Positions 33,974-60,500 of a DNA stretch of 64,000 nt are shown here, piece by piece. How positions within the stretch are numbered: the first letter of the stretch is position 1; each line of letters starts with the position of its first letter. Location: positions 186,001-250,000 of IMG/VR virus record IMGVR_UViG_3300027899_000001; one strand, written 5' to 3'. A model generated the notes under the pieces. It ran no database searches, had not been told where the DNA came from, and saw only the letters and a program-made list of their open reading frames with translations. The position numbers and the translations under genes were made by a program.

Positions 33974-35332
33974 ATGCAAGCACACTATATCAGCGAAAAA
34001 TTTACAGAAGAATCAACAGATCCAATTAGTGATCTTGGTATAGGTATAATAAATGTGAGGAAAGAGTTTAAAACAGAAGAAGAATTTCTTCCTTATCTTT
34101 ATAAAATTTCACCAATGATAATAAATATCAAAGATCCTATAGAAATAATATACGAAGGTGATAAAGACTGGATTTTAAAGCCAAGATTCTTTAATAAAAT
34201 AGAAAAATATTGTGCAAAATATATTACAATAAATGGTGAAAGAGGTGATTTTGGATTTAATCCAGGGAATTTTAAAAGATATATCTTAAAGAAAGCAAGA
34301 AAAAAAATACATGAAGCATTTCGAGAAGAATCTGATCCTACAGAAGATTTAGGAATTGGAAAAGTTCGTTGGTTTAACAAAGTAAAAGATTTTTATATAA
34401 ATCAAGTTTTTGGATATGAAGAAGATGCGGAGCTTTTCATGGAAATCGCTGATGATGAATTAGAAGAAATGTTTCAAAATCAAATAGAGCCCGATGATGC
34501 AGCAGACGAATGTTATAGTGATATTAATTTATATAACAAATGGCGTGAAATGTCGGGTATTGATGAATCTTTAAACGAAAAATTTACAGATGAATCCGAT
34601 CCTATACGTGATATGGGAATAGGCGGAGTTTTTCGTAAAAAAGATTTTCAAACTAAAGAAGAAATATTAGATTTTCTTCTATTATATATACCTAGTATTT
34701 TTAAAACAGAAGAAATTCCAGATGATATTGTATATCCTAAAGAAGCGCATCAAGGCGCATTTAAATATAAATATTGGTACGCTTTAACAGATTATTGTAA
34801 AAAATATATTACTTTAAGAAAAAAAGAAGTAATATTTGATAATCTTCTTTGTATAGATTTATGGATAAAGTTAATAAAAATGGGATATCCTAAAGTAGAA
34901 CAAACTGAAAAAAATCATGATTATGGGCGAGAAATAATAATAGAATCGTTAAACGAAAAGTTTAAAGAACAATCAGATCCTATACATGATATGGGTATTG
35001 GGTGGGATGAAAATACTATTGAAGGGTATCTTAAACTACACGGATATTCTAAAATAAATATTGATCGTAGAAAACGAGGACATATACCCGCTATTAACGT
35101 AGAATTTTCTAAAAATGATGTGAATTTTGAATTTGAGATTGTGTTAGACGATGATTGGGCGTCTTGGAGACATCAATTAGATTGGTGGGATGACAATGAT
35201 AAAAATTATGATTGTCAAACAGAGAGATGGACATTGGGAGATAAAAACGGAGAAATAGACGACGAGAAATTTATAGTGTCTATATTAAAACGAAGATTAA
35301 ATAAATATAATAAACAACATGCGCAAACCTAA
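33974..35332 (+). CDS. Four-module SDP-GIG-tagged polyprotein (putative internal head protein precursor), 452 aa
   Basis: Tag copies at 33974-34045, 34307-34360, 34571-34624 and 34949-35002, each preceded by (I/L)xE. Confidence 0.7.
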   Translation: MQAHYISEKFTEESTDPISDLGIGIINVRKEFKTEEEFLPYLYKISPMIINIKDPIEIIYEGDKDWILKPRFFNKIEKYCAKYITINGERGDFGFNPGNFKRYILKKARKKIHEAFREESDPTEDLGIGKVRWFNKVKDFYINQVFGYEEDAELFMEIADDELEEMFQNQIEPDDAADECYSDINLYNKWREMSGIDESLNEKFTDESDPIRDMGIGGVFRKKDFQTKEEILDFLLLYIPSIFKTEEIPDDIVYPKEAHQGAFKYKYWYALTDYCKKYITLRKKEVIFDNLLCIDLWIKLIKMGYPKVEQTEKNHDYGREIIIESLNEKFKEQSDPIHDMGIGWDENTIEGYLKLHGYSKINIDRRKRGHIPAINVEFSKNDVNFEFEIVLDDDWASWRHQLDWWDDNDKNYDCQTERWTLGDKNGEIDDEKFIVSILKRRLNKYNKQHAQT

Positions 35333-36752
35333 GTCATATTCAGTTTTAGAAGTATTAAATTACGCAGATATCGGACTTACTTTTGAGTTCTATTCTACTA
35401 AAGAATCGAATTTCATAGTGAACGATCTCTCTAATCGTACTTCTAAAAACGTGTTATTAACTAATGAAACTAAATATTATCCTACGTATTCAGATGCGAT
35501 ATTATTGAAAGAATACGAAGCTAAAAGATCTCGCTATAAATTTTTATTAGCTCCTCAGAATTATCATTCGATTCTCCCAATTATTGATAGTGTTACTCAA
35601 TGGATATCAGAAAGCGCTGAGACTGCCCATGATACAGTATTAAAGATATCTCTATCCTTTAATCATCACCAATTAGAAACACTTTCTACAATTTCAAACA
35701 TGAGTCCTACGAAGTTAATGCTAAAATTTGATGAAAGCTTTGTGTATTCAAGATTTCCAGAACAAAAACATTCACCGTACGCGCTATCTATAAAAACATT
35801 AACACCCGTATCCACTTATGTTAATGAAACTGAAATTGCTCAAAATATAGACTATATTTTAACTTTACCTTCTGCAACTTATTATGGAATAGATTTTTCT
35901 AATTATACAAGAGGAATTCTTGAATGTAATTATATTGGTGGAAAAAATTATGCAAATAAGCCTAAAGAAATAAAAGATTTGTTAGAATATTTCATTCTTA
36001 AAACTTATCAAAGCTTAAATGAAGAAGAATATACTTTATTTGAAATTGAAGAAATGAAAAGGTTAACTGAAGATTTTGTAAAAATTCAAATGAGTTATTA
36101 TGATCCTGAAATATTCTTGAAAGAATTTCAAAATATAAAAGTATATGTTGATTTAAAAATGGCAAATCAAACTCTTAAAACGTATTGGAATTTAATAAGA
36201 AAGCCTTTATTTGAAATGATATTGAATGGACATTTAAGAGAAGGACAATTTAATTATGATACTGAGGTTGGAAGATTTCAATTGAGAAAAGGTTATATAG
36301 GAGGAACATTATTAAAGAATTTAGATTTTGTTAAATGTGAAATTACAGGAGTTATGGAAAATTGCACATTCACAGATTGTAATGTAGTTAATTCTAGAGT
36401 ATATAATTCAAAATTTGTTCAAGGAAATAAAGCTATAAATTCATATCTTGAAGGTGTAAGTATCAATAAACAAAACGAAGTTATTAAATCTTATATAATT
36501 AATAATGAAGAAATTGTGAATTGCGCTATTAAAGAAAGTGTAATTAAATTTGCAACACCTGGTAAAAATATTACCCTTGATGAAGATAGCACAATGGTTA
36601 CTAAAAAAGAAAGACTTCCTGAAAAAACAGAAGCTGTTCAAGTAGAAGAAATCCGGGACTATAGTTGGATAAAAAAGATGAATAAGAAATCGGATGATAT
36701 AGGTTATGGAAATCTTTATGATAGAACAAAATATCTAAAAAAAGAAGAATAA
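35319..36752 (+). CDS. Amidoligase-like (COOH-NH2 ligase fold) protein, probably degenerate, with C-terminal beta-helix-like region, 477 aa
   Basis: IGLTFEFY, YYGIDFS and LECNYIGGKNY echo the GxExE, Y..(I/V)N and EFR motifs of phage amidoligases; short hydrophobic periodicity at the C-terminus. Confidence 0.45.
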   Translation: MRKPKSYSVLEVLNYADIGLTFEFYSTKESNFIVNDLSNRTSKNVLLTNETKYYPTYSDAILLKEYEAKRSRYKFLLAPQNYHSILPIIDSVTQWISESAETAHDTVLKISLSFNHHQLETLSTISNMSPTKLMLKFDESFVYSRFPEQKHSPYALSIKTLTPVSTYVNETEIAQNIDYILTLPSATYYGIDFSNYTRGILECNYIGGKNYANKPKEIKDLLEYFILKTYQSLNEEEYTLFEIEEMKRLTEDFVKIQMSYYDPEIFLKEFQNIKVYVDLKMANQTLKTYWNLIRKPLFEMILNGHLREGQFNYDTEVGRFQLRKGYIGGTLLKNLDFVKCEITGVMENCTFTDCNVVNSRVYNSKFVQGNKAINSYLEGVSINKQNEVIKSYIINNEEIVNCAIKESVIKFATPGKNITLDEDSTMVTKKERLPEKTEAVQVEEIRDYSWIKKMNKKSDDIGYGNLYDRTKYLKKEE

Positions 36753-37487: not shown

Positions 37488-37503
37488 TGAACCACTTATG
37501 AAT

Positions 37504-38871
37504 ATGAAATTAATTAGAGAAAATATAATAAACGAAAAATTTAGAGAAGAATCTGATCCTATTAAAGATATGGGTATAGGAATGAAACGTATATATTATT
37601 CTTTTGCACCTCAAGAAACTCAATATATTTTATTACTTCGTTGTGAAAAAATGTCTGAAAAATTAGAAGATTTTTTCATACGTCATTCTTTTTTTTGGTA
37701 TAATAAGAATAATGCATGGGAATCATCTTGGGCATATCCAAAAGATAGATGTATAAGAGAAGCTTCAAAAATATTTAAACAAATAGAAAAACTTAAAACT
37801 TACAAAGTTGTATTAGACAGAGACGAAGAAGTCTTTTTTACAGTTCCTGGCTATAATGTAAATGAAGGTGTAGCAGATAAATATACGAGACAAGATCCAC
37901 ATTTATCTCGTGTTCCTGTAGAACATGAAGATTTTGAAAGAGGATATGAGGAAAAAGAAGCTGAAGGAAAACAAAAAGAAGATAGAGATAAAATTGTATA
38001 TAAGGTTAGTAATCATGTATACGTAATGAAAAATCCCACTTCTTTAGAAAAATTCTCTCCCGATTCACGTGCAATTGTAAATAAAAATGGAGATTTATAT
38101 GTTACTACATATAATGTTATGACTCATGATGAAATGGCTCGAAGATTGGAAAAATTAGGAGAATTAAAATATCAAGATAAATGGTGGCAAAAATCTCCAA
38201 CAGAATTTATCACTATTCAAAGAATGTATAAAGAAAATAAATTTGTATTAGGAGAATCTAATGAAGCTATTATGTATTATGTAGATGCTAGTAGAAGAGC
38301 GATATATAATATGCCTGATACTGTTGAATCTGCTAAAAAAGCATTTATACCTTTTCTTGAAAAAGCGAAAAAAGTAAATCCTCAATATCAATTTATTGAT
38401 AAATCTTTAGATGATTTACTTTATTATGCTCCACATCCTGTTAAAGAAAGTTTAATTAATGAGCCTAAATCAATTACACAAGCAGAAAAACAGTTAGCAA
38501 AAGATAGAGAAATGCCCGGACTTAATAAAAGAATATTAAAAACTATTAAAGATAGAGGTGGTGATATCGTCAAAATTTATGCTGTTAATGCAGATTATGT
38601 AAGAGATAAAAAACCAGGATTAAATTTCGATGGATTCACAGATGGAGGACATCATTATGTAACAAGCTTACCCGGATATAAAAAATGGATACCGGAAAAT
38701 GAAATTTGGATAGATGATGTATTTATGATGAAACCGAATGATTTACGAGCAATACTACAACATGAATTTACAGAAAGAAATCTAATGAAGTATAAACATT
38801 GGTCTTATGATAAGGCTCACGATTATGCAAATAAAAAAGAATCAGAATACAGAGAAAGAGTTAAAAAATAA
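37504..38871 (+). CDS. SDP-GIG-tagged multi-domain protein with C-terminal HExxE...H putative metal site
   Basis: MKLIRENIINEKFREESDPIKDMGIG (start likely the second Met at 37504); internal VNE and ESLINE junction-like sites; QHEFTERNLM...YDKAHDYA. Confidence 0.65.
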   Translation: MKLIRENIINEKFREESDPIKDMGIGMKRIYYSFAPQETQYILLLRCEKMSEKLEDFFIRHSFFWYNKNNAWESSWAYPKDRCIREASKIFKQIEKLKTYKVVLDRDEEVFFTVPGYNVNEGVADKYTRQDPHLSRVPVEHEDFERGYEEKEAEGKQKEDRDKIVYKVSNHVYVMKNPTSLEKFSPDSRAIVNKNGDLYVTTYNVMTHDEMARRLEKLGELKYQDKWWQKSPTEFITIQRMYKENKFVLGESNEAIMYYVDASRRAIYNMPDTVESAKKAFIPFLEKAKKVNPQYQFIDKSLDDLLYYAPHPVKESLINEPKSITQAEKQLAKDREMPGLNKRILKTIKDRGGDIVKIYAVNADYVRDKKPGLNFDGFTDGGHHYVTSLPGYKKWIPENEIWIDDVFMMKPNDLRAILQHEFTERNLMKYKHWSYDKAHDYANKKESEYRERVKK

Positions 38872-38897
38872 GGGAGAATTTTTCTCCCTTTCGTTTT
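38870..38897 (+). terminator. Intrinsic terminator-like hairpin
   Basis: AAGGGAGA-atttt-TCTCCCTT followed by TCGTTTT. Confidence 0.65.
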
Positions 38898-38904
38898 ATA
38901 GAAG

Positions 38905-38918: not shown

Positions 38919-38927
38919 AAGTATTTA

Positions 38928-39290
38928 ATGATAAAGGATATTTATATACGCTCTGTAGACGATCCCAATTTTCAATACGGTGTTTTAGAACATTCAGATG
39001 CAATAGAATCAATTATCGCAAAAATAAAAATGTTATTTGGAACTCGTCCTGGACAAGTAATGGGTGATATCGCATTTGGATTAGGTATAGAAGATTTAAT
39101 TTTTGAAACACGCGTAAATAAAATTCAATTAGAAGAAAAAATAAAATCCCAATTTGATATTTATATATCAGAAACAAAAGATTTTAAAATAACGCCTACA
39201 GTTTCATTTGGACGTGCTGATGGATATGATTATGCTATTATAGATGTTTTTGTAGATGATCAAAGATTGATAGGAATATTAGTTAAATAA
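38928..39290 (+). CDS. Baseplate wedge subunit, gp25-like, 120 aa
   Basis: IKMLFGTRPGQVMGDIAFGLGIEDLIFE matches the gp25 T..GE....P.FG..L..LLFE pattern; size and context fit. Confidence 0.75.
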   Translation: MIKDIYIRSVDDPNFQYGVLEHSDAIESIIAKIKMLFGTRPGQVMGDIAFGLGIEDLIFETRVNKIQLEEKIKSQFDIYISETKDFKITPTVSFGRADGYDYAIIDVFVDDQRLIGILVK

Positions 39291-39565
39291 TGAAAGCAAA
39301 AAGAGTATTTGAAAAATTTGAAGAAGGAACTGATCCTATTGATGATATGAACATAGGAAAGGTAGTATGTCCTTATTGTAAAGGCCATGGATATACAGAT
39401 GAACACGATCCTCTTTGTTATGATCCAAGAACAGGAGAACATGATTGTTATGGATGTCCTATACAAGTTCCATATGATTATTGCAATGGAACTGGAGAAA
39501 TATTAAAAAAGGATATTGCTAGACATCAAGCAGAAGAACAAAATTGGGACGATTTGCCCTTTTAA
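39290..39565 (+). CDS. Tagged small Zn-finger protein with SSB-like C-terminal tail, 91 aa
   Basis: MKAKRVFEKFEEGTDPIDDMNIG; CPYCKGHG, CYGCP, YCNGTG; ends WDDLPF. Confidence 0.65.
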   Translation: MKAKRVFEKFEEGTDPIDDMNIGKVVCPYCKGHGYTDEHDPLCYDPRTGEHDCYGCPIQVPYDYCNGTGEILKKDIARHQAEEQNWDDLPF

Positions 39566-40287: not shown

Positions 40288-42186
40288 ATGGAATTATTTC
40301 AGACTACTCGCGTGAGAATGTCAGAGCTTTATCAAGATGCTCTTACATTTATCACAAATACCTATGGAGACCTTGGACAATATTTCACAATGGCTTCTCC
40401 TATGGGACAATTACTTCAAGTAATTCTTCATTATGGAAGAATGATTTTATTTTATGTTGAAGATTCTGTAACTGAATTAAACATTAAAACTGCATCAAGA
40501 CCACAAAGTATAAAAGGTCTTGCAAGTTTAACTGGTCATAATCCTTCAAGAGCTATGGCAGCAAGAGGAACATTAACATTATCATATAATGGTTCTAAAC
40601 TTCCTACATATGCAAATGTAATTTCTATTCTTAATTATACTCAACTTACAAATAGTCAAAATGGCTTAACATATACTATTATTCTTCCGGGACAAGAAAC
40701 ACGATTAGATTTAACAAATATTACAAATTATATTGAAGTTAATATCGTTCAAGGAAAAATAGAATTTCAACAAGCAACTGGAACAGGAGATGCATTACAA
40801 TCATTTAATTTTCAAAATAAAAAGGGTGCATTTATTGATAATTATTACGTAAATGTTTATGTTGATGGAGTTAAATGGGCTATTGTAGATTCTATTTTAG
40901 ACATGACTATACAACAACCTGCAGTTATGGTTAAAACAGGACAAACAGGAGGAATAGACATTTTCTTTGGAAATGGTTATAACGGTGCTGCTCCAAGAAT
41001 GGGTTCAACTATATTAGTTGAACATCTTATTACTGATGGAGAAACTGGAAATATAAACAGTATGACTACTCCTACTACAAATATATGGAAATTTATAACT
41101 AAAGGATATGCACTTAATGGAGAAGAAATTGATATTAATAAATATGTTTCAATTGCAATAAAAAATGATATAATGTTTGGTGCTCAAGAAGAACCGCTTT
41201 ATCTAACAAGATTATTAGCTCCAAATATGTCAAGGAGTTTTGTTCTTGCAAACACAAACAATTATATTTATTTTCTTAGAAGATTAAATATGTTTACTGT
41301 TATAGATGCTATTCCTGGGTTTGCAACATTTGAAGATCAATATACGCTGGACAAATATAATCAAGCTCAAACAACATATGAAAAAATAAGTACAGAATAT
41401 AGAAATTTAACTGCAACATACGGAGTAACTTCAACACAAGCAACTGCTAAAAAAGTTGAATTAGATAATGCTCAACAACAATTATATACTTATCAAGCAG
41501 CACTTGAAAAACAAAAACAAGATGATAATACAGTTTACTTATTTTTAGTTCCTGATATAAATAAAAGAATACAACCCGGAGAAAATTATTATAATTGTAA
41601 TATGGCTGCATTTTCATTATCAGATGGAGAAAAATTAGCAATATTAGATTTAATAGAACAAAGTGGTCAAAGAATTTTAACAGTTGATAATGTAATATTA
41701 GATTTACAATTTCCAAGATTCACTTTAAATATGTCTCTTATATTATGGGAAGGAGCTTCTTTTGATACCGTAAGACAAAATATTATTTCAGCAACTTCTG
41801 ATTATTTTTTACAAAATACAAGAAGAGACAGAATTCCTGTTTCTGATTTAGTAAGAATTATTGAAGGATTAGATGGAGTGGATTCTGTAAATGTATGGTT
41901 TGATGCAGCAAAAGAAAATTTTGATAAAGTATATAAAAATCATTATGGAATTGATGATTATGGTGATATTATTCTTGAAAGATATGTTAAAGATGCATTT
42001 GGAAATGAAGTGTCTATAAAAGATGTATATCCTATTATTAGAGGAGGGTTTGAAAATGTATCTGGCGTATTTTACGAAGATAGTTTAACAAAAAATAAAT
42101 TATCATCATTAAATATTCAAGTTAGAGGCTATACAGCCAAAAACTTAAATTCAGAACATAATATAGCAATTGTTAATAATCTATGA
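40288..42186 (+). CDS. Baseplate wedge subunit, gp6-like, 632 aa
   Basis: ELNIKTASRPQSIKGLASLTGHNPSR, IFFGNG..G..P and Y/HLITDGETGN are gp6/baseplate-J-like motifs; follows the gp25-like gene. Confidence 0.75.
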   Translation: MELFQTTRVRMSELYQDALTFITNTYGDLGQYFTMASPMGQLLQVILHYGRMILFYVEDSVTELNIKTASRPQSIKGLASLTGHNPSRAMAARGTLTLSYNGSKLPTYANVISILNYTQLTNSQNGLTYTIILPGQETRLDLTNITNYIEVNIVQGKIEFQQATGTGDALQSFNFQNKKGAFIDNYYVNVYVDGVKWAIVDSILDMTIQQPAVMVKTGQTGGIDIFFGNGYNGAAPRMGSTILVEHLITDGETGNINSMTTPTTNIWKFITKGYALNGEEIDINKYVSIAIKNDIMFGAQEEPLYLTRLLAPNMSRSFVLANTNNYIYFLRRLNMFTVIDAIPGFATFEDQYTLDKYNQAQTTYEKISTEYRNLTATYGVTSTQATAKKVELDNAQQQLYTYQAALEKQKQDDNTVYLFLVPDINKRIQPGENYYNCNMAAFSLSDGEKLAILDLIEQSGQRILTVDNVILDLQFPRFTLNMSLILWEGASFDTVRQNIISATSDYFLQNTRRDRIPVSDLVRIIEGLDGVDSVNVWFDAAKENFDKVYKNHYGIDDYGDIILERYVKDAFGNEVSIKDVYPIIRGGFENVSGVFYEDSLTKNKLSSLNIQVRGYTAKNLNSEHNIAIVNNL

Positions 42187-42662
42187 AACTAGTTAGAGAA
42201 CATATAAACGAAAAATTTACAGAAAATACTGATTCTATTTGGGATATGGAAATAGGCTTGCCTAAGACAATGAATAATATTATAGAAAAGATATTAGACT
42301 TAGATATGCAAGAAAAATTAATTGAAAGTGGTACTACTAATAAAGGAAATATAAATCATATTATTGTAAGTAAAGGCAATCTTATAATTAGATATTATAG
42401 TAATCCATTTAAAAAAGGAGAAACACTAAAACAAAAAATACGAATAAGAAAACAATATTATATAGATCTTATAAAAAGAGCTGGTATTAGTGACATGGTA
42501 GAGAAGGGCATAGATACTCCTTTAAGATATAGAATAACTTTTAAGATAAAACAACCTTATATTAGATTTTTTCCAGAAGGATATGACTATGATGAACTAG
42601 ATTATGACTACTTTAAAAATGGCAATATAAGAACATATAAAAGTAAATATACAGGAGAATAG
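42183..42662 (+). CDS. Tagged protein (cargo family B), 159 aa
   Basis: MKLVREHINEKFTENTDSIWDMEIG; ATGA overlap with the gp6-like gene. Confidence 0.7.
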   Translation: MKLVREHINEKFTENTDSIWDMEIGLPKTMNNIIEKILDLDMQEKLIESGTTNKGNINHIIVSKGNLIIRYYSNPFKKGETLKQKIRIRKQYYIDLIKRAGISDMVEKGIDTPLRYRITFKIKQPYIRFFPEGYDYDELDYDYFKNGNIRTYKSKYTGE

Positions 42663-49436: not shown

Positions 49437-50060
49437 TTAAATATATTTATGAAGAGTTGCAGATCTGTTATCAATTATCTTTGAGCCCTGAATTAAAATT
49501 TTATTATCATTAATATATTCACGAATATATTTATCTGACATACCAGTGTCAAAGCATATAAAATCCCCCCATATTTCTTGAGGCATATATTCTAAAGACG
49601 TCAATTCTTTATTATGAGATATATTAAAATTATCTTTTATTATTCTTGGACAATTTTTTAAAGATAATAGCTTATTTTCAAAAAGCATTATAGATAATCC
49701 TATTTCTTTTGGTATACCTTCTAATGACGTAAGTTGATTTTTTCCAATATACAAATTAAAATCTACTTTTTTTGGAAATCCTTTAAAATTTTTTAATCCG
49801 CTTTCATACATTGATATTGTGCCGTGAATCTCATTAAATTTAATAAATTCAGGAAATTCTCCATTTGGTAAAGGTATGGCATGAAAATTTATACCTCTTG
49901 CATTAATAGTAAAATCATCATTTATAGTAGGCTCATATACATTTTTCTCATATTTTTCTAGCCATTCTTTAATTAACTTGCGAGATCCTATACCCATATC
50001 TCTTATAGGATCAGAATCTTCTCTAAATTTCTCATTTATGTGTTCTCTTACTATTTTCAT
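49437..50060 (-). CDS. Tagged LRR-like protein, 207 aa
   Basis: MKIVREHINEKFREDSDPIRDMGIG; repeats LKNFKGFPKKV, LTSLEGIPKEI, LLSLKNCPRII, LTSLEYMPQEI. Confidence 0.75.
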   Translation of the reverse strand: MKIVREHINEKFREDSDPIRDMGIGSRKLIKEWLEKYEKNVYEPTINDDFTINARGINFHAIPLPNGEFPEFIKFNEIHGTISMYESGLKNFKGFPKKVDFNLYIGKNQLTSLEGIPKEIGLSIMLFENKLLSLKNCPRIIKDNFNISHNKELTSLEYMPQEIWGDFICFDTGMSDKYIREYINDNKILIQGSKIIDNRSATLHKYI

Positions 50061-50377
50061 TGTATTAAATATCTTTCATTCATATCTACACGATAAACAA
50101 CATAACTATTATCATAAAAATTTACCCTTTCACCGCCATTATAACTTTCAAAACTATCTATAATACAAGAACGTTTTTTACCTCCAATAAATACACCTGT
50201 TATTTTTTTACCTTTTAAAGAATTTAAAAAATCCAACCACGAAGATAACCAAAAATTATTACCGCTTACATAATATTTAGAACGTTCTTCTTCAAAATTA
50301 ATACCTCCTATTCCCAGATCATGTATAGGATCTGATTCTTCTTTGAATAATTCATTTATATGTTCTCTTACTATCAC
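50057..50377 (-). CDS. Tagged hypothetical protein, ~106 aa
   Basis: Likely GTG start at 50377 overlapping the upstream TAG: (M)IVREHINELFKEESDPIHDLGIG. Confidence 0.7.
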   Translation of the reverse strand: MIVREHINELFKEESDPIHDLGIGGINFEEERSKYYVSGNNFWLSSWLDFLNSLKGKKITGVFIGGKKRSCIIDSFESYNGGERVNFYDNSYVVYRVDMNERYLIQ

Positions 50378-51183
50378 TAATTCCAATTTATTTTTATAGT
50401 ATATTTAAATCTACGATATCCATTTGGATAACTTTTTATAAATTCTTTAGAATGTTCTATACTTTTTATTGAATTAAAAACATTTAAATATTCAGTTTTT
50501 GGTGCGAACGCCCAACGAGATGAAAAGAGGCCAGAAGATATTTTATAACGTTGTTCTGATAAATACTCCATCATTCCAGATTCTTTTAACCAATAATCTA
50601 CATTATTTTTAAACGCAACATTATATGGAGGATATTCCACAGCAATTTGAAGATTACTTCCATCTATCTCATATTTATATAAATTTATAAAATGGTGGTC
50701 TGTCATTAAATCTGTAAACTTCTGCAGTGAATCTTCAATAGCTTTTCGTATTCCTATTCCTAAATCATATACTGGGTCAGATTCTTCTGAGAATTTTTCA
50801 TTTAGATTGCGATTCCATGTCTTATACCCCATTTTTTCTAATTTATTGAAAAGTTTTGTTATTACAAATGATGTAGTTTGGTCAAATCCTTTCATAGAAG
50901 GTATTTTAATATATTTACTAACATATTTACATAAATCTTCATATTTATCGTTATCTAAATGGTCTTGTGCTGTAAATTCTTTAAAAGACTTTGTATATAT
51001 TTTTAGAATATTATCTGGAATTTTATTAGTTTTATAAATAATAGGAATTACTTTTAATAAAAAATCTGCAGCGCCTTCTAACGTATCAAACGATCTTTCT
51101 ACATAAATACCAATTCCTAAATCACGAATAGGATCTGATTCTTCTATAAATTTCTCATTTATATGTTCTCTTACTATTTTCAT
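50377..51183 (-). CDS. Two-module tagged polyprotein, 268 aa
   Basis: N-terminal tag plus internal LNEKFSEESDPVYDLGIG at 50752-50805. Confidence 0.75.
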   Translation of the reverse strand: MKIVREHINEKFIEESDPIRDLGIGIYVERSFDTLEGAADFLLKVIPIIYKTNKIPDNILKIYTKSFKEFTAQDHLDNDKYEDLCKYVSKYIKIPSMKGFDQTTSFVITKLFNKLEKMGYKTWNRNLNEKFSEESDPVYDLGIGIRKAIEDSLQKFTDLMTDHHFINLYKYEIDGSNLQIAVEYPPYNVAFKNNVDYWLKESGMMEYLSEQRYKISSGLFSSRWAFAPKTEYLNVFNSIKSIEHSKEFIKSYPNGYRRFKYTIKINWN

Positions 51184-51524
51184 CTTTCAAATCCCATCTT
51201 TTTAAATCTCTCCATTAATAGCTCTGGCCAATAATATACTCTACATGCCTGCTCTCCTGTAGAAATTCCTTCAAACGAAATATATTCTGTTAAAAATTTT
51301 TGTATAATTAAAAAATATGTATGATTTATAGCTCCACCATATCTTAAAATATCATCAGGAATTTTTGATGTTTTTAAAAGTTGCGGAATAATAGTTATTA
51401 AATAATCTAAAAATTTGTCTACATTTACAAAATCTCGATGCGCATATAATCCAATATTCATATCTCTTATGGGATCCGATTCTTCTTTGAATGCTTCATA
51501 TATATGTTCTCTAACTAATTTCAT
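51180..51524 (-). CDS. Tagged protein (cargo family A), 114 aa
   Basis: MKLVREHIYEAFKEESDPIRDMNIG; IP....T.KIPD.I...Y...KMG motif shared with paralogs. Confidence 0.75.
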   Translation of the reverse strand: MKLVREHIYEAFKEESDPIRDMNIGLYAHRDFVNVDKFLDYLITIIPQLLKTSKIPDDILRYGGAINHTYFLIIQKFLTEYISFEGISTGEQACRVYYWPELLMERFKKMGFER

Positions 51525-51990
51525 GCCGAATGTTCTCCCATTATGATAGTAAAATATTCAATTACACTGGGTTTTATTTTAAAAATTACTTCTGAACAAT
51601 TAAATTCAGTAGGAGGTGCACTAGACGAATTTGATTTAATATCTACCTCGTCTTCCATAAAATACAAAATGCCAGCATGTTTTAAAAGATTTTTAGAATA
51701 CTCAATTTTATTTAAAGGTTTTCCATCAAGAGTTTTAAATAAATTAGAATATGTAAGAACTCTTAATTGTTCGTTGGCTAAATCTATAATTAAACCTCTT
51801 ATATTTTTTTATCACTTATATGCCAATTATTATTCATAGTAGATAGATATTCAAATTTGAAAGTGGTATCATATTTTATTATATCTTCAGGAGATTTTTC
51901 TATATTTTTTACAATGCCAATGCCTAAATCATGAACAGGATCTGATTCTTCTCTGAATTTCTCGTTAATATGTTCTCGTACTATTTTCAT
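51521..51990 (-). pseudogene. Tagged gene (cargo family B) interrupted by a frameshift at an A7 tract
   Basis: The 63-aa ORF stops just after A7 (T7 at 51804-51810). Adding one A gives a 156-aa ORF ending in an ATGA overlap at 51521 and resembling 42183..42662. Confidence 0.7.
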
Positions 51991-56500: not shown

Positions 56501-57001
56501 TTTAATAAAATTGTATGTTAAATATGCTCCAGCAGCAATAACTAATGCTGAATTAATTTGTAATTTTAATTGTTGCACTTTATTTTTATTAATTTCTTTT
56601 TCTATATTATTTAAACTGCTTATCGTATTTAAGATTTCTGGCGCAGTTAAATTATCATTTAGAATAGGAATATTATCTATTGATGCTTCATTATGACATG
56701 CTAATAATATTTGTGATAAATTTGAATTGTCGATTTCTTTAGCTGTAAACTTTAATATTGTTTTTGCTCTTATATCAGTTCTTAAAAATTTTGCAGTATC
56801 TTCTTTACTATATCCACCTTTTAAAATCTTACTAAGTATTAATGCTAAAGCTGCCATGGCAGCTATTTTTAATAAATCTATTTTCTTAGGAATACTCGCA
56901 AATAATTTTTCTAATTCCAAATTAATTTTAAATTTGGCATCAGCTTTAGCCATTTCTGTTTTTTTCTTGACTAATAATTTTGCTTTATTTAATAATCCCA
57001 T
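53549..57001 (-). CDS. Large helical protein with hydrophobic segments, 1150 aa, function unknown
   Basis: Coiled-coil-like stretches and four hydrophobic segments; same operon as the gp5-like gene. Confidence 0.5.
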   Translation of the reverse strand: MGLLNKAKLLVKKKTEMAKADAKFKINLELEKLFASIPKKIDLLKIAAMAALALILSKILKGGYSKEDTAKFLRTDIRAKTILKFTAKEIDNSNLSQILLACHNEASIDNIPILNDNLTAPEILNTISSLNNIEKEINKNKVQQLKLQINSALVIAAGAYLTYNFIKDINIKEGINAEKEALKLQTNQFQEKLQTYKYLLQHNVDMTKDLLTKTVHPSKYRTKYIQKLIRNTYALIKSEYEEIKDSTDKRLSSTKKQFEDLMNSFKNIDDILIAITVITSLYLINRKKLHKHSSQTLKVIATDAICQSDFEPFNVSINKIPFTSTFNCPVVIDDVIVPHRPLEERLKNTSCEIIQNEETTVEATVNEDLVTMAIIQNNRKTDALISFLPKDSFVDQKTKIANLGTQSIFSPIPGYIDEITTNKIVLRDISEPPEDYLTSLINSLNEKYATLNSAKVFLKYYYIKTLYPIMLSISIVDDASTHDQYTGINKQYAGLLLTYNLINEEHDNKIKQIAGQDNVEKHAKNETLNEIKKQIETEDEKFYKHLNLLRDMAQNAAKLTKAKSNEYDLFEYYSLNLGPVFNGIENPTKLEIEIRDKINEFIRKRYVLDGYNKDKLAQKINEGIKEIEKGLSLGDWFKKAMAVYSQNKKLSDLKSWLMGLANDNRKLEGNDKLIAVNRVMFLFELYLNADTIVKKYNLIKKETTQRTETVKEGNYLFTFVEALWKEYLKLPVEIEELQKLIDSISMFTTYSITEYNGKQARLYSIAEPRTCESEEIDPYMNPKSKYGYGDIQYWLKYCSYATLASVTNPAMGWSTGWIFPTPIPFPVVYVPIKPISTSYGVILLGLTICGIYLFPWSLFVNLNTNFVTPFGDPTIALKNEIQALKKEISDQIANLKKISIKPLMDKAKENVDKSKETVKRLKSELKNLKANKPTKYTTTSLEYAKAYGNWVEGVAIYYEAIATESGKLWKYQTEYAILRDAYSGGKSVKGITSSLDSTEKSINNQMNTLNSMADNVNKSIAALPIAISPDTANFGLTAKNPKPVINIAGDLDDNINYNVLNNITDKFKLKNADLLSSNYETKLKGTVLDYKAYKNTLIASMSLITTNDPFPSYQLLRPTNIAWLKFLYKDFVPTGAKTYGFPGQWPLPSL

Positions 57002-57558
57002 TACAATTTAACTTTTATCTCTTGTCTTTGTTTTCCTTTATTATATGTATAAACTACAGTATCAAATTTAACTTTAAAGGGCTTAATTTTTTTTGTGTAT
57101 TTTTTTCCTGTTTTTGGAAGAACATAAGCAAGAGTCATATGAGGATGATAGTCTGGAAAAGATTGAGTATTTGGAAATCTTCTTTCAAGCAAATCATGAT
57201 ACATTTGAAGTTCTTCAGATATAGGAACATCATATTTTACAACATCATAATCATCACATTTAAATATGGAAATTTCTTTAATAGTAGATTCAACAGGTTC
57301 AAAAGTTTTCATAAATTCTTTAACATCATTTGGATCGACTTCATTTAGATGAAGTCCAAATAATAAAGTGCAATGAGGTTTATGTTCTAAACCAAAATCT
57401 TTAAATTCATCATCATAAATATCATCTTTTTCAATAATAGATAAGTGCTCATTCCAGTTTGGAACATCTGCATATAACATAACACAACCATAATCTAATT
57501 TTTTAGATTGCGTTTTTTCTTCTGATAGCCAATTTTTAAAAGTTATAAATTTATGCAT
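57001..57558 (-). CDS. 2H phosphoesterase, T4 gp57B/Acb1-like, with capsid-targeting-like leader, 185 aa
   Basis: Two HxT motifs (PHCTL, PHMTL); SFPDYHPHMTLAY parallels the Acb1 DFDDYTPHITLSY segment as I recall it; leader MHKFITFKNWLSE. Confidence 0.75.
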   Translation of the reverse strand: MHKFITFKNWLSEEKTQSKKLDYGCVMLYADVPNWNEHLSIIEKDDIYDDEFKDFGLEHKPHCTLLFGLHLNEVDPNDVKEFMKTFEPVESTIKEISIFKCDDYDVVKYDVPISEELQMYHDLLERRFPNTQSFPDYHPHMTLAYVLPKTGKKYTKKIKPFKVKFDTVVYTYNKGKQRQEIKVKL

Positions 57559-57955
57559 CTTCCCAGTATTTTTTTAATATTTTTTCATGCTGCTTTTTTC
57601 CTAAATCTGGCAAATCTTCAAACTTTTTAATACCTTGCCGTTTAAATTTTTTAAATTGATATGTATATGCAACTCTTTCTGTATTATTAGTAGGATATTC
57701 TTTACCATCATCTTTAGAACCTTTTTTATATAAAAGATAATGAATTAATTCATGTTTCATCCAATTAAGAGGGTCTTTTTTATAATCATAGTCACTTCTA
57801 ATTCTTACTACATTATCATCAGAATCAAATTCAGTAGGATCATTTTTTCCTTCTGGCCAATCTTCCTTTTTAACTATAACAATAGGTAAATCATAATTAT
57901 CTACTTTAATAAGTCGTGATTCATTTAACCAATTTTTATAACTTTTAAATTTCAT
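57551..57955 (-). CDS. HExxH zincin-like metalloprotein with capsid-targeting-like leader
   Basis: Start probably at the second Met (MKFKSYKNWLNE); KHELIHYL with downstream ExxAY. Confidence 0.6.
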   Translation of the reverse strand: MKFKSYKNWLNESRLIKVDNYDLPIVIVKKEDWPEGKNDPTEFDSDDNVVRIRSDYDYKKDPLNWMKHELIHYLLYKKGSKDDGKEYPTNNTERVAYTYQFKKFKRQGIKKFEDLPDLGKKQHEKILKKYWEDA

Positions 57956-57968
57956 TATATTTTTTATT

Positions 57969-58748
57969 TTATACACTTATAAGAACATTAGTTGATAAAA
58001 TAGTTTGTTTAGTTGCTTCAACAAGCCCTACGTTTACTCCAGGTGTTGCCGGAAATTTTTGATCTAAACTTGCAGCCATTGTTGATAATAACGCAATTAA
58101 AGGTTCTCCTCCAACTGCTGTTTGATATGGGCCTGGACCAATTTTAGTTTTTTGACTTCCATTAACTATAACTTCATCAGCAGTAACTTCTGCTAATGCT
58201 GCTGCAGCTATATGAACTTCATTTTTCGTAGTTACATTAATAACATCACCATCCATTTGAATAATTGAATCATTATTAGGAGTTGATAAAGTTATTAACG
58301 TATCTGGTGTTATTTGAATATATGATTCTTTAAAATAAATTTGAAATCCACTTTTAACTTGAAATATAACAGTAAGTTCTTGTTCAGGATCATATAGAAG
58401 AACATGAGTTCCTTGATAATCATCTTTAATTTTTTTAATAAGTTCAGTGTCAATATTTTGAATAGTTGTATATTCTGGCGCATACATATCACCATTATTA
58501 AATTGAATTCTTACAAATTGGCCAACTTTAGGAACAGAAAGAGATCCAGCGCCATCACCGGCAAATATTGTAGAATTTATAGGAACAGCCCATGGTAAAT
58601 ATTTATCTTCTATTCCATCAAATAAACCCAATACTTTAACTTGACATCTTCCTGAAAATGTAGTATCTTTAGTGTTAACTACAATTCCAATCCAGTCATT
58701 ATCGTGATAATCATGTTGAATAAAATCTATATCAGATGTATATGGCAT
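57969..58748 (-). CDS. Baseplate central spike, gp5/gpV OB-fold, 259 aa
   Basis: WIGIVVNTKD...GRCQVKV...LPWA...SVPKVGQFVRIQFNNGD..P.Y; no lysozyme domain. Confidence 0.8.
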   Translation of the reverse strand: MPYTSDIDFIQHDYHDNDWIGIVVNTKDTTFSGRCQVKVLGLFDGIEDKYLPWAVPINSTIFAGDGAGSLSVPKVGQFVRIQFNNGDMYAPEYTTIQNIDTELIKKIKDDYQGTHVLLYDPEQELTVIFQVKSGFQIYFKESYIQITPDTLITLSTPNNDSIIQMDGDVINVTTKNEVHIAAAALAEVTADEVIVNGSQKTKIGPGPYQTAVGGEPLIALLSTMAASLDQKFPATPGVNVGLVEATKQTILSTNVLISV

Positions 58749-58749
58749 A

Positions 58750-59451
58750 TTAATGTATTAGTTTATATTTTTGTAATAATTTTATTATTCGTATTCTTCT
58801 ATTTTTTACTTTCCAATAAAGAAGATTACGAGATAAATTAGAATTCACTGTTGCTCCAAGTTTTATAATAAATTCAGCAGTTTTAATTTTTCCATTATAA
58901 CAAGCTGTTGCTAAAGAATTACTTAATACTTCAGGAGTTAATTGTATTCCATTGTCTATTAATAATTGAAGTATATGAACATGATCAGTTTTAGCTGTCA
59001 TATAAAATGCTCTTGAATTTTCTAAGTTTACGTCTGCTCCATGATCTATCATAAATTTAACCATTAAGGAATTACCTTTAGTACAAGCTTGCACAAGAAA
59101 TTTTCCATTAGACATATTTAAATCAACGCCTTCTTCAACTAATATTTTAAGTATTTCTAAATTATTATATACAATTGTGTATCTTAAATAATCACTATCT
59201 TGATAATTACTACGTGTAATAGATTTTTTTGCTTGTCTATATAAATAAGAAACAAATTCAGGTTTATTAGATGATATGCATGCTAATAATTTAGAATGAG
59301 CAGAAGAACTTGCATTTGGATAACTACGGCCGCTTTTTTCAAACCAAGTATTAATAGCGTGTTCCATTCCAATTCCCATATCTTGTATAGGATCGGATTC
59401 TTCTGAAAATTTTTCATTTATCCATTTTCTATATGCTGAAAATTTTGTCAT
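58750..59451 (-). CDS. Tagged ankyrin-repeat protein, 233 aa
   Basis: MTKFSAYRKWINEKFSEESDPIQDMGIG; ANK motifs (LKILVEEGVDLN, VKFMIDHGADVN, AEFIIKLGATVN). Confidence 0.8.
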   Translation of the reverse strand: MTKFSAYRKWINEKFSEESDPIQDMGIGMEHAINTWFEKSGRSYPNASSSAHSKLLACISSNKPEFVSYLYRQAKKSITRSNYQDSDYLRYTIVYNNLEILKILVEEGVDLNMSNGKFLVQACTKGNSLMVKFMIDHGADVNLENSRAFYMTAKTDHVHILQLLIDNGIQLTPEVLSNSLATACYNGKIKTAEFIIKLGATVNSNLSRNLLYWKVKNRRIRIIKLLQKYKLIH

Positions 59452-59453
59452 CG

Positions 59454-60500
59454 TTAAAATAATTCATATTTTTTTAATAAGTCATAAACTCTTATTCTTC
59501 TACGTTGTTGAGACCATTTTTTCAATAACATTTTTAAAAGACTATTTACTTTTGCGCCTTTTTCTACTAAAAATTCTATCATTTTCAAATCTCCTCTGTC
59601 ACAAGCACTAGTTAATGCAGCATCTAAAATTTCTTTATCTATATCTATATTATCTAACAGATATTGTATAACATTTTTATGTCCAGCATTAACTGCTACT
59701 AAAAATAAATCTCTATTATATCCAATGCCAGTATTTGCGCCATTGTTAATTAAATATTCTAACATAGGTATATTGTCATATACCGTTGTATTTCTAAGTA
59801 TACAAGGATTTGCATTTACATTTGCTCCTGCTTCAACTAACATTTTAACTATTTCAAAGTTATTATAATTTACTGCTGTTTCTAAATAATCACCATAATT
59901 ATAATTTAAATTAGGAACTTTTGGTATAAGATATTTAACGAATTCTATTTTATTATCTACAATACTTTGTCTTAATCTTGAGCGAATATCATTAAAATAT
60001 AAAGGATATAATTTATCTCTAAAATAATCATCCATTATTCTTTCAATTCCAATACCCATATCATGAACTGGATCTGATTCTTCTTTAAATTTTTCATTTA
60101 CTGACGTATTTGGCGAAATGTTTGTATGATATTTACTATTTAATAATTTAATAACTTGTTCAACCATATCTATTACTTTAATATTTTCCCATTCATGACT
60201 ATATGCGTTTTCAGTATGTTCGAATGCATTTTTAAATGCTATATTATCATTTGCGTTAATTGTCAGTTCTTTTAAAGTAAAATAAAGAAGCATAACACAT
60301 ATAGTTTTTTCAGCATCTGTTTTCTTTTTATCTCGAAAATTTTTATTATAGAACGTTGTTGTACTTATAGGCCCCATTCTTTTTATTTCCTCTTTCCATA
60401 AATTTTGTAAATAAGGACGGCCTATACCCAAATCTTTTATTGGATCAGATTGATCAGAAAACTTTTCATTTAACCATTTTCTATATGCGTAGAATTTCAT
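59454..60500 (-). CDS. Two-module tagged polyprotein, second module ankyrin repeats, 348 aa
   Basis: N-terminal tag; internal VNEKFKEESDPVHDMGIG at 60048-60101; VKMLVEAGANVN, IEFLVEKGAKVN. Confidence 0.8.
   Translation of the reverse strand: MKFYAYRKWLNEKFSDQSDPIKDLGIGRPYLQNLWKEEIKRMGPISTTTFYNKNFRDKKKTDAEKTICVMLLYFTLKELTINANDNIAFKNAFEHTENAYSHEWENIKVIDMVEQVIKLLNSKYHTNISPNTSVNEKFKEESDPVHDMGIGIERIMDDYFRDKLYPLYFNDIRSRLRQSIVDNKIEFVKYLIPKVPNLNYNYGDYLETAVNYNNFEIVKMLVEAGANVNANPCILRNTTVYDNIPMLEYLINNGANTGIGYNRDLFLVAVNAGHKNVIQYLLDNIDIDKEILDAALTSACDRGDLKMIEFLVEKGAKVNSLLKMLLKKWSQQRRRIRVYDLLKKYELF

What the first reader, a model, noticed from the sequence alone, without database searches (positions are those of the whole stretch)
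33974..60500. Candidate new system: a shared peptide tag (xNE-KFxEESDPIxDMGIG) on diverse cargo proteins, probably capsid-packaged effectors
Seen: 16 copies of (I/L/V)xE-(K/A/L)Fx(E/D)(E/Q/D)(S/T)DP(I/V)xD(M/L)(G/N)IG in 11 ORFs, listed by lower coordinate: 33974 x4, 37504, 39290, 42183, 49437, 50057, 50377 x2, 51180, 51521, 58750, 59454 x2. The tag heads otherwise unrelated domains: ankyrin, LRR, Zn finger, acidic and two unknown families. Codons vary synonymously (tca/tct/tcc; ggt/gga/ggc/ggg), so selection acts on the peptide. N-terminal copies follow an 8-13-aa leader ending in (I/L/V)xE (MKIVREHINE, MKFYAYRKWLNE). Established: T4 internal proteins carry a ~10-aa capsid-targeting sequence (MKTYQEFIAE type) that prohead protease gp21 removes after (I/L)xE, and they are injected with the DNA. 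Inference: the leader loads cargo into the prohead, and cleavage exposes a conserved ~15-aa N-terminus that is a second address (core docking, ejection or host-target binding). I know of no equivalent retained tag in T4 internal proteins.
Basis: partly seen in the sequence, partly recalled or inferred. Interest (0 to 1): 0.95.

Follow-up and report, generated by a model that had tools for sequence, protein, structure and literature searches.

The report
Shared cargo tag in Lak-like megaphage
A 405-kb freshwater phage related to the Lak megaphages puts the same short peptide, right after what looks like a capsid-protease cutting site, in front of dozens of unrelated small protein domains. This points to a large, unnamed system for loading and trimming cargo proteins in the phage head, though no experiment has yet tested it.

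Summary
There are 16 copies of (L/I/V)xE-KFxEESDPIxDMGIG in 11 ORFs, against none expected by chance.

The window belongs to a 405-kb IMG/VR contig from freshwater. Its capsid protein is 48% identical to that of the Lak megaphages. A tag profile hits 1,669 protein clusters in metagenomes. Some proteins carry up to 10 copies, spaced about 120 aa apart. The tag is absent from cultured phages, Pfam, NCBIfam, PHROGs and PDB, and essentially absent from cellular genomes.

Codons in the tag vary as freely as background, so selection acts on the peptide. The domains behind the tag fall into more than 100 unrelated clusters. AlphaFold folds those domains confidently but leaves leader and tag undocked.

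The 8-13-aa leader resembles the T4 capsid-targeting sequence. The same genome encodes a gp21-type (S77) prohead protease. Its capsid protein has LNE where T4 gp23 is cut, and about 70 relatives conserve this. Leaders also occur without the tag. Sister lineages keep the leaders but carry different 16-aa tags.

My reading is capsid-targeted cargo, including polyproteins, cut at NE|KF so that a lineage-specific tag stays on each piece. Packaging, cleavage and the tag's role are all inferred.

The parts
33974..35332 (+). 452-aa ORF with four tag copies: ISE|KFTEESTDPISDLGIG at 33989-34045, IHE|AFREESDPTEDLGIG at 34307-34360, LNE|KFTDESDPIRDMGIG at 34571-34624, LNE|KFKEQSDPIHDMGIG at 34949-35002. 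A polyprotein-like string of modules of about 110-125 aa.
   Evidence: modules 1 and 3 belong to the 'Y.R.F..IPDDI' body family
37498..38871 (+). 457-aa ORF with an N-terminal leader MNMKLIRENIINE and a tag at 37528-37581. The large C-terminal body has no family match.
39290..39565 (+). 91-aa ORF with the 8-aa leader MKAKRVFE and a tag at 39305-39358 (VFE|KFEEGTDPIDDMNIG), followed by a Cys-rich body (CPYCKGHG...CNGTG). Its start overlaps the stop of the gp25-like baseplate gene 38928-39290.
42183..42662 (+). 159-aa ORF with leader MKLVREHINE and a degenerate tag at 42204-42257 (KFTENTDSIWDMEIG, 21 bits). Its start overlaps the stop of the baseplate-wedge gene 40288-42186.
49437..50060 (-). 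207-aa ORF with leader MKIVREHINE and a tag at 49986-50039. The body looks like a leucine-rich repeat by eye; there is no Pfam hit.
50057..50386 (-). 109-aa ORF (TTG start called) with leader ..VIVREHINE and a tag at 50306-50359 (INE|LFKEESDPIHDLGIG).
50377..51183 (-). 268-aa two-module ORF with an N-terminal tag at 51109-51162 and an internal tag at 50752-50805 (NRNLNE|KFSEESDPVYDLGIG).
51180..51524 (-). 114-aa single-module ORF with leader MKLVREHIYE and a tag at 51450-51503. Used for structure prediction: the body has pLDDT above 90, while leader plus tag score 53-57.
51521..51990 (-). Tagged gene in two frames. ORF 51799-51990 (63 aa, tag at 51916-51969) stops just after an A7 run. A -1 shift there gives a continuous 156-aa product ending at 51521. 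The sequence is identical in a contig from another sample.
58750..59451 (-). 233-aa ORF with leader MTKFSAYRKWINE, a tag at 59368-59421, and ankyrin repeats (Ank_2, 2.3e-23).
59454..60500 (-). 348-aa ORF with leader MKFYAYRKWLNE and a tag at 60420-60473, an internal tag at 60048-60101 (NTSVNE|KFKEESDPVHDMGIG), then ankyrin repeats.
57001..57558 (-). Leader without tag: MHKFITFKNWLSE|EKTQ..., on a 2H phosphoesterase (2_5_RNA_ligase2 at 38 bits; Acb1 at 24.7 bits, below its cut-off).
57551..57976 (-). Leader without tag: MKFKSYKNWLNE|SRLIKV..., on a 141-aa protein with an HELIH motif and no family match.

Best explanation
The unit has two parts. The first is an 8-13-aa amphipathic leader, or inside polyproteins a linker of the form (I/L/V)(K/R)E(S/H)(L/V/I)NE. 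It ends in (L/I/V)-N-E, which is the maturation site used by this clade's gp21-type prohead protease. The second part follows immediately: a 15-aa peptide, KFxEESDPIxDMGIG. The most likely mechanism is this. Tagged proteins and polyproteins are made late and are recruited to the prohead core in the way T4 internal proteins are recruited by their capsid-targeting sequence. The prohead protease then cuts after the Glu. Leaders are removed and polyproteins are chopped into domains of about 13 kDa, each starting with the same tag. The retained tag is a flexible linear motif that binds one shared partner encoded by the phage: the core or scaffold, the inner capsid surface, the portal, or an exosite of the protease itself. 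It therefore acts as the retention or sorting signal for more than 60 different cargo modules per genome. What is shown: the motif, its modularity, selection at the peptide level, the protease and its conserved LNE site in the capsid protein, separability of leader and tag, and the lineage-specific nature of the tag. What is inferred: packaging, cleavage at E|K, the identity of the partner, and any delivery into the host.
For: The motif is real and modular. There are 16 copies in the window. In 106 IMG/VR stretches there are 418 copies in 250 distinct ORFs, with P3 L/V/I at 95-97% and P1 E at 96-98%. A profile search hits 1,669 clusters among 1.84 billion representatives, with up to 10 copies per protein. 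Selection acts on the peptide. The bodies fall into 105 BLAST clusters, and only ankyrin and DUF6267 have clear Pfam matches. AlphaFold gives confident bodies but leaves leader plus tag at pLDDT 38-57 for two different cargo types. The leader resembles T4 MKTYQEFIAE in length and at M1, K2, E6, I8 and E10; the T4 sequence targets proteins to the core and is removed at L/I-X-E (PMC9026906). The same genome has a Peptidase_S77 protease-scaffold protein and a gp23-like capsid protein. LNE at the position matching the gp23 cut is conserved in about 70 capsid proteins, including Lak-A1. [LIV]NE occurs 10 times against 1.3 expected in the scaffold protein. The same leaders occur without the tag on enzymes, and on a small protein whose sequence after the leader is homologous to the mature N-arm of the capsid protein. 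Sister lineages, with protease 78-80% identical, keep the leaders (MKIVREHLNE, MRAKFINE) but carry other 16-aa tags (IKQNIEGSGLxxIGIG; xxxFxRGxDPxxSMGVG). This is the pattern expected if the tag co-evolves with a phage partner. Tagged genes overlap the stops of baseplate genes and follow the portal gene in four to five related contigs.
Against: There is no direct evidence of packaging or cleavage. No cultured phage carries the tag, no RNA run was listed, and no proteome is available. Tag genes are scattered over the whole 405-kb contig, with at least 67 copies between 58 and 397 kb, and not only in structural modules. In 79 protease-neighbourhood loci from other contigs no tag lies within 10 kb of the protease gene. 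[LIV]NE is also enriched in two probable tail proteins of the window, so the enrichment is not specific to the head. Some tagged proteins have no N-terminal leader; about 6% have their first tag more than 40 aa from the start, for example a protein with a HAD-like N-terminus in L029. Leader-only proteins show that the tag is not needed if the leader alone does the targeting. More than 60 cargo species per capsid is a great many.
Confidence: 0.55

Rival explanations
1. The tag is only the P' half of an extended protease recognition site. It makes the scissile bond next to a folded domain accessible and specific, so that polyproteins are processed efficiently. After cleavage it has no address or docking role.
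For: The tag always abuts the [LIV]xE site. It is predicted to be flexible. It differs between lineages whose proteases are 78-100% identical, which fits co-evolution with the protease. Internal copies punctuate polyproteins at regular 105-144-aa spacing.
Against: T4 gp21 and its giant-phage homologues need only a three-residue P-side motif (PMC9026906). The capsid protein, the scaffold and the leader-only proteins of the same genomes have LNE or [LIV]xE sites with unrelated P' residues. Fifteen residues at 80-98% conservation across hundreds of paralogues is far more than accessibility requires.
Confidence: 0.15
2. The leader plus tag is an uncut, shared interaction motif used in the infected cell and not in the virion. 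It could recruit many different domains to one phage or host hub, such as a chaperone, a compartment or a degradation machine. On this view the resemblance to a prohead protease site is incidental.
For: Tag genes are dispersed through the genome. No tag is seen within 10 kb of the protease gene in any of the other 79 protease-neighbourhood loci. Ankyrin and repeat cargos are typical protein-binding adaptors. Nothing here shows cleavage.
Against: P1 Glu is conserved at 96-98% and P3 is aliphatic at 95-97%, matching the clade's conserved capsid maturation site. The leader parallels the T4 capsid-targeting sequence. The same leaders sit on a homologue of the capsid N-arm exactly at the predicted mature end. 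Some tag genes are translationally coupled to baseplate genes.
Confidence: 0.15
3. This is one expanded paralogous family, and the 'tag' is simply the best-conserved N-terminal stretch of a common domain inherited by duplication.
For: Module size is uniform (median 121 aa). One body family of 51 members recurs.
Against: The bodies fall into 105 BLAST-unrelated clusters that include ankyrin repeats, Cys-rich modules and a 376-position DUF6267 domain. DUF6267 occurs both with and without the tag. The tag is not part of the predicted fold.
Confidence: 0.05
4. The conserved stretch acts at the DNA level, as a recombination boundary for shuffling gene cassettes.
For: Tags lie at every module border, and tandem single-module genes and polyproteins look interconvertible. 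Tag DNAs are 72-91% identical over 40-130 nt.
Against: Synonymous codon entropy inside the tag equals or exceeds background, and Ser uses both the TCN and AGY codon families. Conservation is therefore on the peptide.
Confidence: 0.03

Closest known systems
T4 capsid targeting sequence (CTS) and internal proteins IPI/IPII/IPIII and Alt
   Same: A short N-terminal propeptide of about 10 aa is shared by otherwise unrelated proteins (here MK(I/L)VREHINE; T4 MKTYQEFIAE). It ends in the L/I-X-E motif of a gp21-family serine protease, and the same genome encodes such a protease. The cargo set is hypervariable and the cargo genes are scattered around the genome.
   Different: Here a second, 15-16-aa conserved peptide follows the predicted cut and would stay on the mature protein; T4 IPII and IPIII continue with unrelated sequence. 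The unit is also used internally to punctuate polyproteins of 2-10 modules. There are tens of cargo species per genome, not three or four. Module pI is spread from 4.8 to 9.3 and is not uniformly basic. There is no sequence homology to the T4 internal proteins.
Processed inner-body and ejection proteins of phiKZ, 201phi2-1 and SPN3US
   Same: These are huge phages whose heads hold many paralogous internal proteins cut after Glu by a gp21-related protease. Paralogues can share conserved N-termini, as SPN3US gp53 and gp54 do (PMC5694885).
   Different: Those phages use S/A/G-X-E sites and often have propeptides longer than 100 aa. Here P3 is L/I/V and the leaders are 8-13 aa. No genome-wide retained tag or regular polyprotein punctuation has been described for them in the papers read.
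Polyvalent proteins of phages and conjugative elements (Iyer et al. 2017, PMC5512222)
   Same: Several unrelated domains lie in one polypeptide that is predicted to be packaged, proteolytically released and delivered with the DNA.
   Different: Polyvalent proteins are built from known conflict domains and usually carry their own metallopeptidase. Here the modules are mostly unknown 100-aa domains, no embedded peptidase was found by Pfam, and release would be by the prohead protease at a repeated site-plus-tag.
Lak megaphages (Prevotella phage Lak-A1 and relatives)
   Same: They are the nearest named relatives: the capsid protein is 48% identical over 98% of its length, GC is low, and the LNE motif sits at the same capsid-protein position.
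   Different: No Lak genome in the phage collection matches the tag in a tblastn search with E up to 10. Only 42 kb of Lak-A1 was inspected for leaders.

Membership tests
T4-type CTS / internal-protein system | Short (10-19 aa) N-terminal propeptide shared by otherwise unrelated proteins | tested here: met
   The K of the tag is at residue 9 or 11 in 64% of 250 ORFs. There are three leader classes, found on more than 100 body clusters and on proteins without the tag.
T4-type CTS / internal-protein system | Propeptide ends in the gp21 cleavage motif L/I-X-E | tested here: met
   P3 is L/V/I at 95-97% and P1 is E at 96-98% over 338 distinct copies. All 16 window copies conform. The motif definition comes from PMC9026906.
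T4-type CTS / internal-protein system | Genome encodes a gp21-family prohead protease with a core or scaffold | tested here: met
   L069, on the same 405-kb contig, has Peptidase_S77 at 57 bits (cut-off 27). LGELDHP and SSRAAG align with the T4 gp21 His and Ser motifs. The protease is fused to a 600-aa scaffold-like region and lies next to a gp23-like capsid protein.
T4-type CTS / internal-protein system | [quoted passage not shown] | not testable with these tools
   No cultured phage, proteome or RNA run was available.
T4-type CTS / internal-protein system | Mature protein is ejected into the host with the DNA | not testable with these tools
   This needs an infection experiment.
T4-type CTS / internal-protein system | Sequence homology to T4 IPI/IPII/IPIII | tested here: not met
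   No PHROG, Pfam or NCBIfam family of internal proteins was hit.
phiKZ/SPN3US-type processed head proteins | Cleavage motif S/A/G-X-E | tested here: not met
   P3 is L/V/I in more than 95% of copies. Peptidase_S80 scores lower than S77.
Polyvalent proteins (PMC5512222) | Multidomain polypeptide built from known conflict domains, usually with an embedded peptidase | tested here: not met
   Of 117 module representatives and 7 long polyproteins, Pfam finds only ankyrin and DUF6267 clearly, plus weak IDEAL, HEPN_AbiA_CTD and WG_beta_rep hits. No peptidase domain was found.
Any described domain or motif family for the tag itself | Significant match of the tag to Pfam, NCBIfam, PHROGs or a PDB chain, or a mention in the literature | tested here: not met
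   Searches found nothing. A full-text search for DMGIG returns only unrelated GIGYF papers. Cluster members are named 'hypothetical protein' or left unnamed.

The most novel reading that the evidence does not exclude
The tag is a retained 'zip code' that is tuned to each lineage. After the prohead protease trims the leader, every one of more than 60 cargo modules begins with the same free N-terminal peptide. That peptide docks them to one site inside the capsid and orders their exit. If so, this would be a natural, programmable system for packaging and delivering many proteins in megaphages. It would have a module grammar (leader, cut site, tag, 100-aa domain) that also works in tandem as polyproteins. 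The uniform N-terminal Lys could in addition act as a timer for degradation in the host. That last point rests on my general knowledge of bacterial N-end rules and was not tested.
Probability: 0.3. Interest if true: 0.85.

Novelty: new variant of a known kind. Interest (0 to 1): 0.68.

Why it matters
Megaphages of the Lak type are known only from metagenomes, and most of their genes have no assigned role. This grammar would assign a likely location (the head interior) and a likely processing step to dozens of genes per genome and to at least 1,669 protein clusters. It extends the T4 capsid-targeting idea in two ways: a retained, co-evolving second peptide, and polyprotein arrays cut by the prohead protease. 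If the tag proves to be a docking signal, it would also give a compact handle for loading foreign proteins into large capsids, and a way to find injected proteins, possibly including anti-defence factors, by sequence alone.

Tried and rejected
- **Megablast of 9.8 kb and tblastn of a 268-aa tagged protein against 50,697 phage records:** no match. A 30-aa tag query at E up to 10 returned only chance-level hits.
- **Rfam and tRNA scans of the window:** nothing found.
- **Word-indexed homologue search with the 114-aa protein:** only 5 candidates and 1 relative, so it was uninformative.
- **ESM Atlas:** only unnamed viral clusters, with low scores.
- **Foldseek of the modelled 'Y.R.F..IPDDI' body against PDB:** no hit below E = 0.5, so the fold is unassigned.
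- **Sequencing runs:** one freshwater DNA run, probably the source sample, and no RNA run listed, so expression timing could not be checked.
- **Tags near the protease gene in 80 related loci:** found only in the window's own genome, so this adjacency is not a general feature.
- **Portal adjacency:** seen in four to five contigs whose portals are near-identical to one another. I count it as one conserved arrangement, not as independent events.
- **GTDB genome scan:** 6 exact DNA matches. Four are chance hits in unrelated proteins and 2 are true tags on small MAG contigs that are probably mis-binned phage.
- **Ribosomal RNA as the cause of the GC-rich stretch at 28-32 kb:** rejected. The stretch is a collagen-like G-x-Q repeat protein.


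Full report
**1.
A profile built from the copies scores exactly 16 places in the six-frame translation at 21-52 bits; the next best place scores 5 bits. A degenerate DNA pattern for DP(I/V)xD(M/L)xIG matches 13 times, against 0.00 expected from shuffles.

Two copies are degenerate: 42204-42257 and 34307-34360. A 63-aa tagged ORF ends just after an A7 run, and a -1 shift there gives a 156-aa product of normal module size. The same sequence is present in a contig from another sample.

**2. What the window is.**
The window has 28% GC and no tRNA or Rfam hits. The region from 34 to 64 kb is a contractile-tail and baseplate module. It holds:
- a gp25-like gene at 38928-39290;
- a baseplate wedge gene at 40288-42186;
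- a gp5/VgrG-like OB-fold gene at 57969-58748;
- a head-tail adaptor-like gene at 36753-37487;
- fibre-like giant genes.

Tagged genes are interleaved with these on the same strand. Two of them start on the stop codon of a baseplate gene.

The window is part of the 405-kb IMG/VR contig 3300027899_000001, because locus L025 contains the 33974 ORF letter for letter. The source is a freshwater metagenome. The capsid protein of this genome is 48% identical over 98% of its length to that of the Prevotella Lak megaphages, which are the nearest named relatives.

**3. The motif is a widespread, unnamed, virus-only module.**
An exact degenerate DNA pattern found 106 stretches in IMG/VR. They hold 418 copies (338 distinct) in 250 distinct ORFs.

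A 32-position profile searched against 1.84 billion cluster representatives hits 1,669 proteins at E ≤ 0.001 and 642 at E ≤ 1e-10. One 1,203-aa protein has 10 copies. The members I looked up come only from metagenome sources and are unnamed or 'hypothetical'.

The tag was not found in any of the following:
- Pfam, PHROGs and NCBIfam;
- any PDB chain;
- any of 50,697 deposited phage genomes.

It also has no literature mention in a full-text search. Among one genome from each of 185,579 prokaryotic species, only two true copies exist, both on small MAG contigs.

**4. Anatomy.**
The consensus is (L/V/I, 95-97%) (N, 62-71%) (E, 96-98%) | K F x E (E/D) S D P I x D (M/L) G I G.
- **Position in the ORF:** in about 85% of ORFs the first copy is N-terminal, behind an 8-13-aa leader. 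The main leader classes are MK(L/I)V(R/K/A)E(H/Y/F)I(N/Y)E, MxKFxxY(R/K)xW(L/I)NE and M(K/R)A(K/R)x(V/I)xE.
- **Internal copies:** these sit behind a linker that imitates the leader, (I/L/V)(K)E(S)(L/V/I)NE.
- **Copy number and spacing:** ORFs carry 1-8 copies (up to 10). Spacing is 105-144 aa with a median of 121.
- **The bodies behind the tag:** they fall into 105 BLAST clusters. Of 117 representatives, only ankyrin (3) and DUF6267 (1) have clear Pfam hits.
- **Level of selection:** codon entropy inside the tag equals background, so selection is on the peptide.
- **Predicted structure:** the 'Y.R.F..IPDDI' body (pLDDT above 90) and the ankyrin body (85-96) fold with confidence. Leader plus tag stay at 38-57 and do not pack on either body.

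The tag therefore behaves as a portable linear motif and not as part of a fold.

**5. Link to the prohead protease.**
Locus L069, on the same 405-kb contig, encodes a 781-aa protein. Its first 170 residues or so are Peptidase_S77, the T4 gp21 family (57 bits). LGELDHP and SSRAAG align to the gp21 motifs. The rest of the protein looks like scaffold, and a gp23-like capsid protein follows.

T4 gp21 cuts after L/I-X-E. The 10-aa T4 capsid-targeting sequence brings internal proteins to the core and is then removed (PMC9026906). T4 IPII and IPIII begin MKTYQEFIAE|A in the T4 record. The commonest leader here, MKIVREHINE|K, has the same length and shares M1, K2, E6, I8 and E10.

T4 gp23 reads ...FGSFLTE|AEIGG at its known maturation cut (the position of the cut is established knowledge). 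This phage's capsid protein reads ...HFHALNE|AAMGG at a comparable distance before the aligned core. In about 70 capsid proteins from relatives whose proteases are 50-100% identical...AH(F/Y)H(A/S)LNE is nearly invariant, while the residues after E vary (AAMGG, GFTYP, SAGAY, EAVGG). Lak-A1 has ...AKLNE|DAF.

[LIV]NE occurs 10 times in the protease-scaffold protein, against 1.3 expected from composition. It occurs 3 times against 0.2 in the capsid protein. Most other window proteins are at expectation, although two probable tail proteins are also enriched.

The tripeptide in front of every tag is thus the clade's own maturation motif. Actual cleavage is inferred, not shown.

**6. Leader and tag are separable.**
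The same leaders occur without the tag on several proteins:
- a 2H phosphoesterase (window 57001-57558; 2_5_RNA_ligase2 at 38 bits, and an Acb1 hit just under its cut-off);
- the neighbouring 141-aa protein (57551-57976);
- a cytidylyltransferase-like protein;
- DUF6267 proteins, a domain that also occurs behind a tag;
- many small proteins.

One leader-only protein, of about 130 aa and rich in Lys, continues after ...INE| with LMGAGASPGMG..APASVAATTGAQ..GSGDK. This is homologous to the capsid protein's sequence directly after its ALNE|. Two proteins with different propeptides therefore share a homologous 'mature' start exactly at the predicted cut.

**7. The tag is lineage-specific and the leader is not.**
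Type A tags (KFxEESDPIxDMGIG) were found only on contigs whose protease is at least 89% identical to the window genome's. Related contigs of 130-364 kb with 62-86% identity have no exact-pattern hit, although the window genome has dozens.

Relatives at 78-80% identity carry the same leaders (MKIVREHLNE, MRAKFINE, MKAKLVINE) followed by other 16-17-aa peptides:
- **Type B:** IKQNIEGSGLxxIGIG.
- **Type C:** KQNFKRGLDPKKSMDIG and AVSFQRGKDPMTSMGVG. Type C bridges types A and B.

Net charge runs from acidic (A) to basic (C). Only a hydrophobic start and the final Φ-G-Φ-G are common to all three. Within a genome, dozens of paralogues keep one version although their synonymous sites are scrambled. 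This is the pattern expected for a peptide that must fit one partner encoded by the same phage.

**8. Best explanation and its limits.**
I think these are head-internal cargo proteins and polyproteins. They would be recruited in the T4 manner and cut by the prohead protease after (L/I/V)NE, leaving domains of about 13 kDa that each begin with the tag. The tag would serve as a docking or retention peptide for a phage partner. I put confidence at about 0.55 for packaging plus cleavage, and lower for the docking role.

Several findings count against this:
- There are no expression, proteome or isolate data.
- Tag genes are dispersed over the genome, with at least 67 copies in the 158 kb fetched.
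- Tags are not adjacent to the protease gene in the 79 protease-neighbourhood loci from other contigs.
- A few tagged proteins have no N-terminal leader.

The rivals are that the tag is only the P' side of the cleavage signal; that it is a cytoplasmic hub-binding motif that is never cut; that it reflects plain paralogy; and that it is a DNA recombination boundary. The first two cannot be excluded with these data. The last two are disfavoured.

**9. Comparison and novelty.**
The system most resembles the T4 capsid-targeting and internal-protein system. It meets all the defining features I could test: a shared short propeptide, an L/I-X-E end, and an S77 protease in the same genome. It differs in three ways: the retained and co-evolving second peptide, its use as polyprotein punctuation, and its scale.

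It is not of the phiKZ/SPN3US type, which uses S/A/G-X-E sites and long propeptides (PMC5694885). It is also not a polyvalent protein in the sense of PMC5512222, because it has no known conflict domains and no embedded peptidase.

I rate it a new variant of a known kind. The motif family itself appears to be undescribed.

Noticed in passing
window 57001-57558 (-): A 2H phosphoesterase (2_5_RNA_ligase2 at 38 bits; anti-CBASS Acb1 model at 24.7 bits, just under its cut-off of 27) carries the CTS-like leader MHKFITFKNWLSE but no tag. If the leader means capsid loading, this would be a pre-packaged nuclease for cyclic nucleotides or RNA ends. Orthologues with the same leader are in L022, L097 and L103.
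   Followed up: partly
window 51521-51990 (-): A tagged gene is split by a frame change at an A7 run (GATAAAAAAATATAA). A -1 slip yields a 156-aa protein of normal module size. The same sequence occurs in a contig from a different sample (L002). It could be a pseudogene or programmed or transcriptional slippage.
   Followed up: partly
L046:1284-1676 (+) and the C-terminal part of the segment L088|+1|1576: A small Lys-rich protein of about 130 aa has the leader MKAKSINE|. Its next 45 or so residues are homologous to the capsid protein's N-arm directly after its ALNE| site (APASVAATTGAQ...GSGDK). It may be a capsid-arm mimic or a core protein.
   Followed up: partly
L138, L139, L140, L212-L218: Sister lineages have the same leaders but different 16-17-aa tags: IKQNIEGSGLxxIGIG, and KQNFKRGLDPKKSMDIG or AVSFQRGKDPMTSMGVG. 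Only 11 type-B copies were collected, and their full distribution is unknown.
   Followed up: partly
window 27301-32556 (-): A 1,751-aa ORF with a long collagen-like G-x-Q repeat (505 Gly, 397 Gln). It explains the jump to 43% GC and the strong skew at 28-32 kb, and it generates many spurious ORFs on the opposite strand. A 145-aa protein with the same repeat lies next to the capsid gene in L069 (4322-4759).
   Followed up: partly
window 1110-27297 (-): A run of giant ORFs of 1,578, 380, 389, 1,341 and 5,002 aa. The 5,002-aa protein is highly repetitive (rich in N, L, T, S) with recurring units of the form 'GILxWxLGDxSxNVNANxxSHTY'. None carries the tag.
   Followed up: no
window 32698-33915 (+): A 405-aa protein with three S1 RNA-binding domains (Pfam S1, 1.1e-22) lies directly upstream of the first tagged gene. 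It resembles a phage-encoded ribosomal protein S1.
   Followed up: no
window 39582-40286 (+) and 52706-53554 (+): Two ORFs look like homing endonucleases by eye (a GIY-YIG-like N-terminus and an HNH-like N-terminus). They share K-rich repeats of the form 'GKxHTEExKxKxS' and are inserted among structural and tag genes. An Hsp20 gene lies at 52159-52596 (phrog_432).
   Followed up: no
window 53549-57001 (-) and 60497-62653 (-): Two probable tail-internal proteins are also enriched in [LIV]NE: 6 against 1.5 expected, and 5 against 0.7. The second begins MKTMYNQFRGASPKIAE|K, which ends in an I-A-E tripeptide like the T4 CTS. Whether the prohead protease motif is used outside the head is unclear.
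   Followed up: no
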